Shown one piece after another: positions 24,511-25,563 of a stretch of DNA of 64,000 nucleotides; the first letter of the stretch is position 1; each line of letters starts with the position of its first letter. The stretch covers positions 741,487 through 805,486 of the forward strand of contig NW_004797419.1 in NCBI RefSeq assembly GCF_000002075.1. Reading direction: 5' to 3'. This DNA comes from Aplysia californica (taxonomy: Eukaryota). The notes beneath the pieces are model-generated. The model had not been told where the DNA came from and did not search any database. It worked only from the letters and a program-made list of their open reading frames with translations. The translations under genes were made by a program, and so were the position numbers.

Positions 24511-25563
24511 NNNNNNNNNNNNNNNNNNNNNNNNNNNNNNNNNNNNNNNNNNNNNNNNNNNNNNNNNNNNNNNNNNNNNNNNNNNNNNNNNNNNNNNNNN
24601 NNNNNNNNNNATAATAATAATGATGATGATGATGATGATGATGATGATACTGAGGATACATCAGGCATAAGGTGAACCCTCTTCTCCACCCTCGAGGATC
24701 TTGACTTTGCCGACGACCTTGCACTGCGCGGCTCTCCCATACCAACCAGCACATGCAGGAAAAAACAAACCGACTCTACAAATACGGACGACAGATTGGG
24801 TTAAGAATAAAAAAGCCAGAAAAAGACAGAAGTGATGACACTGAATGTAGGCTCTCCAACGCGATTAGGGTGAACAACAGGGACCTCCCTATATAACAGA
24901 CACATTTATCTACCTAGGCAGCATAATCAAAACTGACGGCGGCACAAAGGAAGACATCATGGACAGACTCAGCAAGGCAAGATCTGTAGGCCTACATGTA
25001 CACAAAAGCATGGTCAACATCTGGAAGTCAGGACTGTTTAGTATACAAACCAAGCTAAAGCTGTATAACAGCTGTGTACTATCCACACTCCTATATGGAG
25101 CTGAATGCTGGAGGATGACTGATCATGACCGTGCCAAGCTATCTTCCTTTCATACAACCAGCTTACGCCAAATCCTCAGGATCTTCTGGCACGACAAGTT
25201 CCAACGCAGATCTGTTATGTAAATGTAGGCAAGAGGACATGACCACCATACCGGTAATAAAAAGGAGAAGATAGAGATGGATTGGACATGATCTGAGAAG
25301 AGAACCAGACTCTATTGTGAAGACTGCCCTCCACTAGACACCCGAAGGACGTAGCAAAAGGGGCAGACCCAAAGTGACCTGGAGACGCACAGAGTTGAGT
25401 CTGAAAGAAGGAGTTTAGAACTCACCTTTAATCTCCTTGGCCTGAAATGAAATCCTGGAATCATTCGTGGGGAACGTAGACCAAGATGGCCCAAAACAGA
25501 CAGAGCGAGAGATCCTATGTTGTTGCCCTAAACGCCAGATGGCGTACTGGGTAGTAAGTAAGT
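24466..25563 (+). mobile_element. 5'-truncated RTE-clade LINE (RT C-terminal half, frameshifted)
   Basis: LEDLDFADDLAL, FIYLGS, TKLKLYNSCVLSTLLYGAECW, RWIGH, KRGRPKVTWRRT; (TAAG)n tail; TSD AAGCACTATT(T)GCGATAT at 24448-24465 and 25564-25580. Confidence 0.93.
24472..24648. repeat. (TAA)n-(gap)-(GAT)n compound microsatellite
   Basis: direct; spans the N gap at 24511-24610. Confidence 0.95.

What the first reader, a model, noticed from the sequence alone, without database searches (positions are those of the whole stretch)
24987..25256. 6-bp palindromic insertions at TA sites (TA-GGCC-TA, TA-CATG-TA, TA-CCGG-TA) are demonstrably insertions inside an RTE LINE
Seen: the RTE reading frame has TAGGCCTACATGTA (24987-25000) and TACCGGTA (25249-25256). 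Removing 12 and 6 nt restores KARSVHKSMVNIW and MTTIIKRRR*RWIGH, which match the spacing I recall for RTE homologues (KARAAFLQLKNIW; IxRRRWRWIGH). Established: Tc1 excision can leave TA-CATG-TA, i.e. 2 nt of each end between duplicated TAs. Inference: at least four TA-targeting families with CA/TG, GG/CC, CC/GG and GA/TC ends repeatedly insert and excise in the germline, leaving frame-preserving +6 scars, sometimes stacked at one site.
Basis: partly seen in the sequence, partly recalled or inferred. Interest (0 to 1): 0.78.

Follow-up and report, generated by a model that had tools for sequence, protein, structure and literature searches.

The report
Transposon exit scars in a dead LINE
Three six-letter palindromic insertions at TA sites in a dead retrotransposon copy are real and are most likely scars left when cut-and-paste transposons jumped out; two such scar types are very common in this genome, but their source element was found for only one type.

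Summary
TAGGCCTACATGTA (24987-25000) and TACCGGTA (25249-25256) are +12 and +6 insertions in a 5'-truncated LINE tail. All 29 aligned paralogs lack them, and 169 copies genome-wide keep the first site intact.

GGCC and CCGG are untemplated. They duplicate the TA and add a 4-bp palindrome, which is the canonical Tc1/mariner-superfamily excision footprint. The CATG unit could equally be a tandem duplication of TGTACA.

- **TAGGCCTA:** 52,570 copies genome-wide against about 9,600 for its control.
- **TAGATCTA:** 177,062 copies.
- **TACATGTA:** about twofold over its control.
- **TACCGGTA:** not enriched, so CCGG is a single event here.

A 2.2-kb pogo-like family in the window has a TA duplication and GA...TC ends. 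It prefers TC|TA targets, and its ends abut GA/TC scars more often than chance. It is a credible source of the GATC scars. CAGT-ended MITEs could supply CATG. No GG...CC or CC...GG element was found.

Many genome-wide copies of these words are inherited inside other transposons and change length in a way ordinary slippage explains, so the counts overstate independent events.

Other windows of this scan noted the same words; I treat those notes as leads, not evidence.

The parts
24640..25560 (+). 5'-truncated, decayed copy of a non-LTR retrotransposon (the RTE-like tail of the RT ORF plus a (GTAA)n end). It is the host sequence in which the scars lie.
   Evidence: 41 genomic matches at 83-87% BLAST identity. 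It is 94.8% identical to the 30-copy consensus over aligned columns. Longer paralogs carry RVT_1 (E 2e-25 to 8e-15) plus DUF6451. The window piece hits DUF6451 at E 1.4e-5, below Pfam's cut-off.
24987..24992 (.). TAGGCC: a +6 insertion at a TA (TA-GGCC-TA), untemplated.
   Evidence: Absent from all 29 aligned paralogs and from 169 intact sites genome-wide. The flanks offer no template for GGCC.
24993..24998 (.). TACATG: a second +6 unit. It reads TA-CATG-TA but also equals a tandem duplication of the consensus TGTACA.
   Evidence: Consensus ...ATCTGTACACAG... against window ...ATCTG TAGGCC TACATG TACAC.... The normalised gap has 4 nt of placement freedom.
25249..25254 (.). TACCGG: a +6 insertion at a TA (TA-CCGG-TA), untemplated and unique in the genome at this site.
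   Evidence: Absent from all 29 paralogs. A whole-genome pattern search finds only the window copy.
28622..30831 (-). Non-autonomous pogo-like DNA transposon flanked by TA, with ends GAGTAG...CTACTC. It is followed directly by GATC-TA and is the candidate source of the GA/TC scars, though not of the scars in the LINE copy.
   Evidence: Homology in many full-length or end-reaching copies (80-94% identity) begins and ends on the flanking TAs, at query 171-2384. An ORF fragment has a pogo-like C-terminus and a weak PHD hit. 2 of about 17 right ends and 2-3 of 26 left ends abut GA/TC scars.

Best explanation
The GGCC and CCGG insertions, and possibly the CATG one, are excision footprints of TA-targeting cut-and-paste transposons of the Tc1/mariner/pogo superfamily. 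An element integrates at a TA and duplicates it. On excision the transposase cuts exactly at the 3' ends and 2 nt inside the 5' ends. Each flank then keeps TA plus a 2-nt 3' overhang from the element's end. End joining keeps both overhangs and gives TA-N1N2-N2'N1'-TA. The result is palindromic because the element's ends are inverted repeats, and it always adds 6 bp. Shown here: the insertions are real, untemplated (GGCC, CCGG) and of exactly this form; the same form is strongly over-represented genome-wide for GATC and GGCC; and a resident TA-flanked GA...TC family is associated with GA/TC scars and prefers TC|TA targets. Inferred: elements with GG...CC and CC...GG ends once sat at these two TAs and left. 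Genome-wide, an unknown but substantial share of the scar words is not independent. They were copied along with the transposons that contain them, and arrays change length by slippage.
For: 1. The insertions are real relative to 29 paralogs and 169 intact sites.
2. Enrichment is specific. In 278 kb the observed/expected ratios are GATC 21x, GGCC 19x and CATG 4.5x, while the other palindromic cores lie between 0 and 2.7. Genome-wide, TAGGCCTA is 52,570 against 9,622 for its control, TAGATCTA is 177,062, and TACATGTAH is 59,404 against 27,609.
3. A second repeat family has TA-GGCC-TA at one TA in 3 copies and TA-GAATC-TA in a subfamily. Private 5-bp variants also occur: TA-GGC-TA twice (L008, L038) and TA-CAG-TA once. 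TAGGCTA has the highest observed/expected ratio of all TA-NNN-TA words. These fit imperfect footprints.
4. The window has an untemplated private GATC insertion at 27707 relative to a paralog.
5. The pogo-like GA...TC family has TA flanks. The base before the TA at its left ends is C in 12 of 26 and G in 0 of 26 (p = 0.0015 and 0.004). About 4 of 43 ends abut GA/TC scars and none abuts GGCC (p about 1e-4). TAGATCTA sites show the same C at -1 (70%).
6. The 2-nt stagger and TA target of this superfamily are established (PMC2170065, read).
Against: No TA-flanked element with GG...CC or CC...GG ends was found in the window, in 278 kb of sampled genome, or by four pattern hunts. TACCGGTA shows no genome-wide excess. 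CAGT-ended MITEs are the commonest TA-flanked elements sampled, yet CATG is only about twofold enriched, so scar abundance does not track visible element abundance. A 307-copy MITE family carries TAGATC-TAGRCC-TAGATC in its consensus, so raw counts overstate events. In rice, footprints are heterogeneous, with only 8 of 94 'perfect' (PMC4423477), so such uniform scars are unusual. No filled-versus-scar allele pair was seen. Read data could not be obtained.
Confidence: 0.62

Rival explanations
1. Ordinary replication slippage or tandem duplication. The 6-bp units are duplications of adjacent sequence, and arrays grow like hexanucleotide microsatellites.
For: The CATG unit equals a duplication of the consensus TGTACA. 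In family 2, the CTAGAT to CTAGATCTAGAT change is a perfect tandem duplication. Across 307 MITE copies the array gains or loses TAGATC only next to an existing TAGATC.
Against: GGCC at 24989-24992 and CCGG at 25251-25254 have no template in the flanks. The same holds for GGCC in family 2 and GATC at 27707. Slippage does not explain why only the GATC and GGCC cores are about 20-fold enriched among the 16 palindromic cores.
Confidence: 0.1
2. A TA-directed break-and-repair process that does not use the ends of a resident mobile element. Examples would be a domesticated or host nuclease cutting at TA, or an unknown process that inserts short palindromes. GGCC and CCGG would then not be copies of any transposon terminus.
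For: No GG...CC or CC...GG element was found despite several searches. GGCC scars are about 40,000 above background. GATC and GGCC sites co-vary along the genome (rho 0.49) and are overdispersed, as if one regional process drove both. GGCC sites prefer a G-TA-C context, at 39%.
Against: The sample is only 0.03% of the genome. The GA...TC family, with roughly 40-70 matches, would also have been missed had it not been in the window. The form TA+2+2+TA is exactly what the known mechanism predicts, and the GA/TC class does have a matching element. No known repair process adds a fixed untemplated palindrome.
Confidence: 0.18
3. The 6-mers belong to the LINE subfamily's own sequence, inherited from a source element, or are assembly artefacts.
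For: L008 carries TAGGC-TA at the same TA and shares 2 rare substitutions with the window copy, so one ancestral GGCC event cannot be excluded.
Against: 0 of 29 paralogs and 169 intact genomic sites lack the insert. Other genomic matches to the junction string are unrelated loci. TACCGG is unique. The flanks of L008 are not homologous to the window. The same insertion type is shared by subfamilies of another repeat, which an assembly error would not produce.
Confidence: 0.04

Closest known systems
Canonical Tc1/Tc3-type excision footprint (TA-CA-TG-TA), produced by a 2-nt staggered cut by Tc1/mariner/IS630 transposases
   Same: A TA duplication plus 2 nt from each inverted end gives a 6-bp gain and a palindromic octamer. 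TA is the exclusive target. 5-bp variants occur alongside (TA-GGC-TA, TA-CAG-TA).
   Different: The cores here are GGCC and CCGG, for which no element was found. The scars are fixed in a reference genome at a scale of 10^4-10^5 and are unusually uniform. The CATG example in this LINE copy is not distinguishable from slippage.
pogo/Tigger-group DNA transposons, such as Passer, which leave 0-4-bp footprints (PMC9976928)
   Same: The window's 2.2-kb element has TA flanks, a pogo-like transposase C-terminal remnant and short inverted ends. Its ends abut GA/TC scars.
   Different: Its termini start GAGTAG rather than the usual CAGT. Only a non-autonomous copy was seen. A TC|TA|GA target bias, which mimics its own end-flank junction, was inferred from 26 ends only.
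Excision footprints catalogued genome-wide in rice (PMC4423477)
   Same: Evolutionary fixation of DNA-transposon excision sites, detectable by comparison of related sequences.
   Different: In rice most footprints are irregular, with deletions and filler, and only 8 of 94 are 'perfect'. Here a single regular form dominates strongly enough to distort k-mer counts.
Hexanucleotide microsatellites
   Same: (TAGATC)n arrays vary in unit number between paralogous copies.
   Different: Units of different core (GATC, GGCC, GACC) and length (6, 7 or 8) are interleaved. Isolated single units appear at TAs with no template.

Membership tests
Tc1/mariner-superfamily excision footprint | The site is a TA in the unoccupied (ancestral) sequence, and the TA is duplicated after the event. 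| tested here: met
   The consensus of 29 paralogs has a single TA at both sites. The window has TA-N4-TA.
Tc1/mariner-superfamily excision footprint | The nucleotides between the two TAs are the terminal nucleotides of the two inverted ends, and so form a palindrome. | tested here: inconclusive
   The palindrome is present (GGCC, CCGG, CATG). A matching element was found for GA/TC and CA/TG. None was found for GG/CC or CC/GG.
Tc1/mariner-superfamily excision footprint | An allele or ortholog with the element still in place at the same TA. | not testable with these tools
No sister genome was available.
Tc1/mariner-superfamily excision footprint | The inserted nucleotides are not templated by the flanks, which separates a footprint from slippage. 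| tested here: met
   Met for GGCC and CCGG. Not met for CATG, which equals a duplication of TGTACA.
RTE clade of non-LTR retrotransposons (the host sequence) | Reverse-transcriptase ORF. | tested here: met
   RVT_1 at E 2e-25 to 8e-15 in four longer paralogs.
RTE clade of non-LTR retrotransposons (the host sequence) | A very short 3' UTR made of short tandem repeats and no poly(A). The feature is recalled from Malik and Eickbush 1998. | tested here: met
   The ORF tail runs directly into (GTAA)n at 25549-25566.
RTE clade of non-LTR retrotransposons (the host sequence) | Phylogenetic placement of the RT within the RTE clade, and an APE endonuclease domain. | not tested
   No clade-level comparison was run. 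The copies fetched do not reach the 5' part.
pogo-like DNA transposon (element 28622-30831) | TA target-site duplication and defined termini shared by the copies. | tested here: met
   Homology in most full-length copies begins and ends on the flanking TAs. The sequence upstream of the TA is variable at 26 left ends.
pogo-like DNA transposon (element 28622-30831) | A DDE_1-type transposase. | tested here: inconclusive
   Only a short C-terminal remnant (a GFxKxGLFPYNPD-like motif, judged by eye) and a weak PHD hit were seen. There was no Pfam DDE hit and no autonomous copy was examined.

The most novel reading that the evidence does not exclude
The GGCC scars, about 40,000 above background, and the lone CCGG scar may not come from any conventional resident transposon. 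They could be products of a TA-specific cleavage-and-repair activity, or of an extinct hyperactive family, acting regionally in the germline. Because a scar recreates the preferred target (TC|TA, G|TA|C), scars would seed further events and grow into the palindromic arrays now carried around by other transposons. The scar map would then be a fossil record of where the germline genome was accessible.
Probability: 0.15. Interest if true: 0.75.

Novelty: new member of a known kind. Interest (0 to 1): 0.45.

Why it matters
A dead LINE copy serves as a clean control here. The family consensus gives the ancestral state, so each 6-bp gain can be read as one mutational event. Cut-and-paste transposons in this genome appear to have left regular, recognisable scars in numbers large enough to distort k-mer statistics, at about 50,000 and 177,000 copies for two words. 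Such scars add whole codons when they fall in coding sequence, create new TA targets and seed short palindromic arrays. They could be used to measure past transposition rates and target preferences without seeing the elements. The mismatch between abundant GGCC scars and the absence of a GG...CC element is a concrete open problem.

Tried and rejected
1. GGCTATTCGGACTC inverted repeats at 19941-20481 looked like a GG...CC element. Genome-wide, the bases upstream are conserved (TCCCGT / CGAAGT), so the motif is internal and not TA-flanked.
2. I looked for element ends abutting their own scar with ...HCC-TAGGCCTA. The 1,568 hits were mostly TAGACC-TAGGCC arrays and internal parts of several repeats. 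The commonest of these, GGGCTATGGCC..., has a conserved upstream and is internal too.
3. TIR scans of 278 kb found CAGT-ended and TAA/TTA-flanked CTCA-ended elements but none with GG or CC ends. A k-mer end-matching scan was confounded by mixed copy orientation.
4. The abundant 'TA-ACTCA...' MITEs that seemed to contradict the model are really TAA/TTA-flanked (PIF/Harbinger-like), so no TA-ACGT-TA scar is expected from them.
5. GGCC does not derive from GATC by two transitions. Single-step intermediates (20 sites) are fewer than GGCC (31 sites), which does not fit independent mutation.
6. Apparent extra LINE copies with TAGGCC at site 1 (C297, C170) turned out to be unrelated loci.
7. Reading the empty-site paralog of the pogo-like element (C379) by pattern failed with no match.
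9. Literature searches found no report of this phenomenon in this organism.

Full report
**What is there**

The window belongs to a 927,310,431-bp assembly in 4,332 contigs. That size and contig count match my memory of the Aplysia californica reference, but I did not verify this with a tool. Positions 24640-25560 are a decayed, 5'-truncated copy of a non-LTR retrotransposon. It sits between an N gap with a trinucleotide repeat on one side and a (CT)n run with a second N gap on the other.

The copy has 41 genomic matches at 83-87% BLAST identity. Over aligned columns it is 94.8% identical to the consensus of 30 copies. Longer paralogs encode RVT_1 plus DUF6451. The ORF tail runs straight into (GTAA)n, as I recall for RTE elements. 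I did not test clade placement.

**Checking the observation**

TAGGCCTACATGTA lies at 24987-25000 and TACCGGTA at 25249-25256. In an alignment with 29 paralogs, every paralog reads ...AAGATCTG-TA-CACAG... at site 1 and ...ACCACCA-TA-ATAAAA... at site 2. The window therefore carries +12 and +6.

Whole-genome pattern searches give the following:
- 169 copies have site 1 intact within 3 mismatches.
- Only one other copy has any +6 there, and it is not of this type.
- TACCGG at site 2 occurs only in the window copy.

Deleting the inserts restores KARSVHKSMVNIW and MTTIIKRRR*RWIGH.

Paralog L008 has TAGGC-TA (+5) at the same TA as site 1. It shares only two other rare substitutions with the window copy, and its flanks are unrelated. 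Whether that is an independent hit or shared ancestry stays open. Two further genomic matches to the junction string (C297, C170) are unrelated loci.

GGCC and CCGG have no template in the flanks. The CATG unit is ambiguous, because TGTACA to TGTACATGTACA is a perfect tandem duplication of the consensus.

**Is the form more than chance?**

I pooled the window with 59 of the fetched loci, 278 kb in all, and scored all 256 TA-NNNN-TA octamers against an order-2 Markov expectation.

| Core | Observed/expected in 278 kb |
|---|---|
| TATATATA (microsatellite) | 22.7x |
| GATC | 21x |
| GGCC | 19x |
| CCGG | 4.9x (5 sites) |
| CATG | 4.5x |
| Other palindromic cores | 0 to 2.7 |

Whole-genome counts are in the next table. 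The built-in control is the same word read backwards.

| Word | Genome count | Control |
|---|---|---|
| TAGGCCTA | 52,570 | 9,622 |
| TAGATCTA | 177,062 | 95,245 (ATCTAGAT, itself inflated by arrays) |
| TACATGTAH | 59,404 | 27,609 |
| TACCGGTA | 8,620 | 10,798; also 9,622 for ATCCGGAT |

GATC and GGCC are therefore strong genome-wide classes and CATG is a modest one. CCGG is not a class at all, and the CCGG insertion in this LINE copy is a single event.

The window is richer than the genome average, by 3.4-fold for GGCC and 1.9-fold for GATC. On contig 1 the sites are overdispersed, and the two types co-vary in 10-kb bins (rho 0.49, p = 0.002).

**Independent events in other repeats**

A second repeat family (window 58850-59350, 30 copies) has a consensus TA at one site. 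Three copies there carry TA-GGCC-TA, and one subfamily carries TA-GAATC-TA. A whole-genome search finds only those GGCC copies.

A catalogue of private insertions supported by at least four paralogs adds:
- TA-GGC-TA in L038, the same 5-bp form as in L008;
- TA-CAG-TA in L056.

TAGGCTA has the highest observed/expected ratio among all TA-NNN-TA words. The window also has an untemplated GATC gain at 27707 relative to a paralog. The process therefore recurs in unrelated host sequences and produces the imperfect variants expected of end joining.

**Not every copy of the word is an event**

One MITE family is flanked by TAA/TTA and so is PIF/Harbinger-like. It has two inverted copies in the window and 307 pattern matches genome-wide. 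It carries TAGATC-TAGGCC-TAGATC-TAGCAC, or TAGACC in a second subfamily, in its consensus. Copies differ by gain or loss of a TAGATC next to another TAGATC.

In family 2, a CTAGAT to CTAGATCTAGAT change is a perfect tandem duplication. Several other repeats contain TAGGCCTA internally. Raw counts therefore overstate independent events. Arrays can be inherited and can grow by slippage once seeded.

**Source elements**

Positions 28622-30831 hold a 2.2-kb non-autonomous element. Homology among its many copies (80-94% identity) starts and stops on flanking TAs. Its ends read GAGTAG...CTACTC. It keeps a pogo-like transposase C-terminal remnant and a weak PHD hit.

In the window its right TA is followed by GATC-TA. 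Of about 17 right ends of the family, 2 are followed by GATC-TA. Of 26 left ends, 2-3 are preceded by TAGATC or TAGAATC. None abuts GGCC. The probability of this association by chance is about 1e-4.

The base before the TA at left ends is C in 12 of 26 and never G (p = 0.0015 and 0.004), often as TC|TA. TAGATCTA sites show C at that position in 70% of flanks. This ties the family, or its relatives, to the GA/TC scars. It also suggests that a scar recreates the preferred target, though that rests on few ends.

TA-flanked MITEs with CAGTGG or CAGTAG ends are common in the sample and could supply CA/TG scars. No TA-flanked element with GG...CC or CC...GG ends turned up in TIR scans or in four targeted pattern searches. 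The sample covers only 0.03% of the genome, and the GA...TC family would have been missed too had it not been in the window. Absence is therefore weak evidence, but the gap is real.

**Mechanism**

Transposases of this superfamily integrate only at TA. [quoted passage not shown] That leaves TA plus a 2-nt 3' overhang on each flank. Joining that keeps both overhangs gives TA-N1N2-N2'N1'-TA.

This accounts for three features of the scars: the TA duplication, the palindrome and the fixed +6. I infer that GG- and CC-ended elements visited the two TAs in this LINE copy.

GGCC is not a mutated GATC. The one-step intermediates (20 sites) are fewer than GGCC (31 sites).

The uniformity of the scars contrasts with rice, where only 8 of 94 excisions were 'perfect' (PMC4423477). 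It also contrasts with the 0-4-bp footprints of a pogo-family element in cell assays (PMC9976928).

**What could not be done**

After that I read junctions only through pattern searches.

Other windows of this scan carry notes on the same words, including two follow-ups on TAGATCTA that reached similar readings. I treat these as leads, not as evidence.

**Verdict**

- The footprint reading is the best explanation for GGCC and CCGG.
- It is only one of two readings for CATG.
- The 'four families' claim holds for GA/TC, where a source was found, and plausibly for CA/TG.
- It is unproven for GG/CC and lacks genome-wide support for CC/GG.

This is an instance of a known mechanism. The abundance and regularity of the scars, and the missing GG...CC source, make it moderately interesting.

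Noticed in passing
window 21432-21457 and 16032-16055; genome-wide: A roughly 1-kb MITE family flanked by TAA/TTA (PIF/Harbinger-like, 307 pattern matches) carries TAGATC-TAGGCC-TAGATC-TAGCAC in its consensus. TAGATCTAGGCCTAGATCTA is a perfect 20-bp palindrome. A second subfamily has TAGACC in place of TAGGCC, and unit number varies among copies.
   Followed up: partly
window 28622-30839: The pogo-like GA...TC element sits directly beside a GATC-TA scar. Across the family, left-end targets favour C, and often TC, before the TA and never G. The scar therefore recreates the preferred target.
   Followed up: partly
genome-wide: The 17-mer ATCTGTAGGCCTRCATG occurs at six loci with unrelated flanks, five of them with A at the R position, against about 0.4 expected for that form. 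TAGGCCTA is followed by C in 39% of flanks. This suggests that GGCC scars prefer a (T)G-TA-C(A) context.
   Followed up: partly
window 25393-25435: The same LINE copy has a private 43-bp insertion that none of the 29 paralogs has. It is not TA-flanked and its origin is unknown. The copy also has a private GCGCG at 24726.
   Followed up: no
window 27922-28447: A nest of small inverted-repeat elements contains (CCCTAA)n telomere-type repeats flanked by AGGCCTA or GACCTA units.
   Followed up: no
contig 1, 0-372 kb: TAGATCTA and TAGGCCTA sites are strongly clustered, with about 38 GATC and 8 GGCC sites in 200-215 kb and almost none in 135-200 kb. Spacings of 13 bp recur within clusters.
   Followed up: partly
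L037:1024-3034, L051:1280-2192: Elements with CAGACCTGCCAC...GTGGCAGGTCTG ends and 7-8-bp target duplications (hAT-like) are inserted in copies of the second repeat family. Their end words are among the most over-represented 8-mers in the sample.
   Followed up: no
window 19941-20481: GGCTATTCGGACTC inverted repeats include a 28-bp back-to-back palindrome. They belong to a repeat with about 270 genomic matches in which the motif is internal, not terminal.
   Followed up: yes
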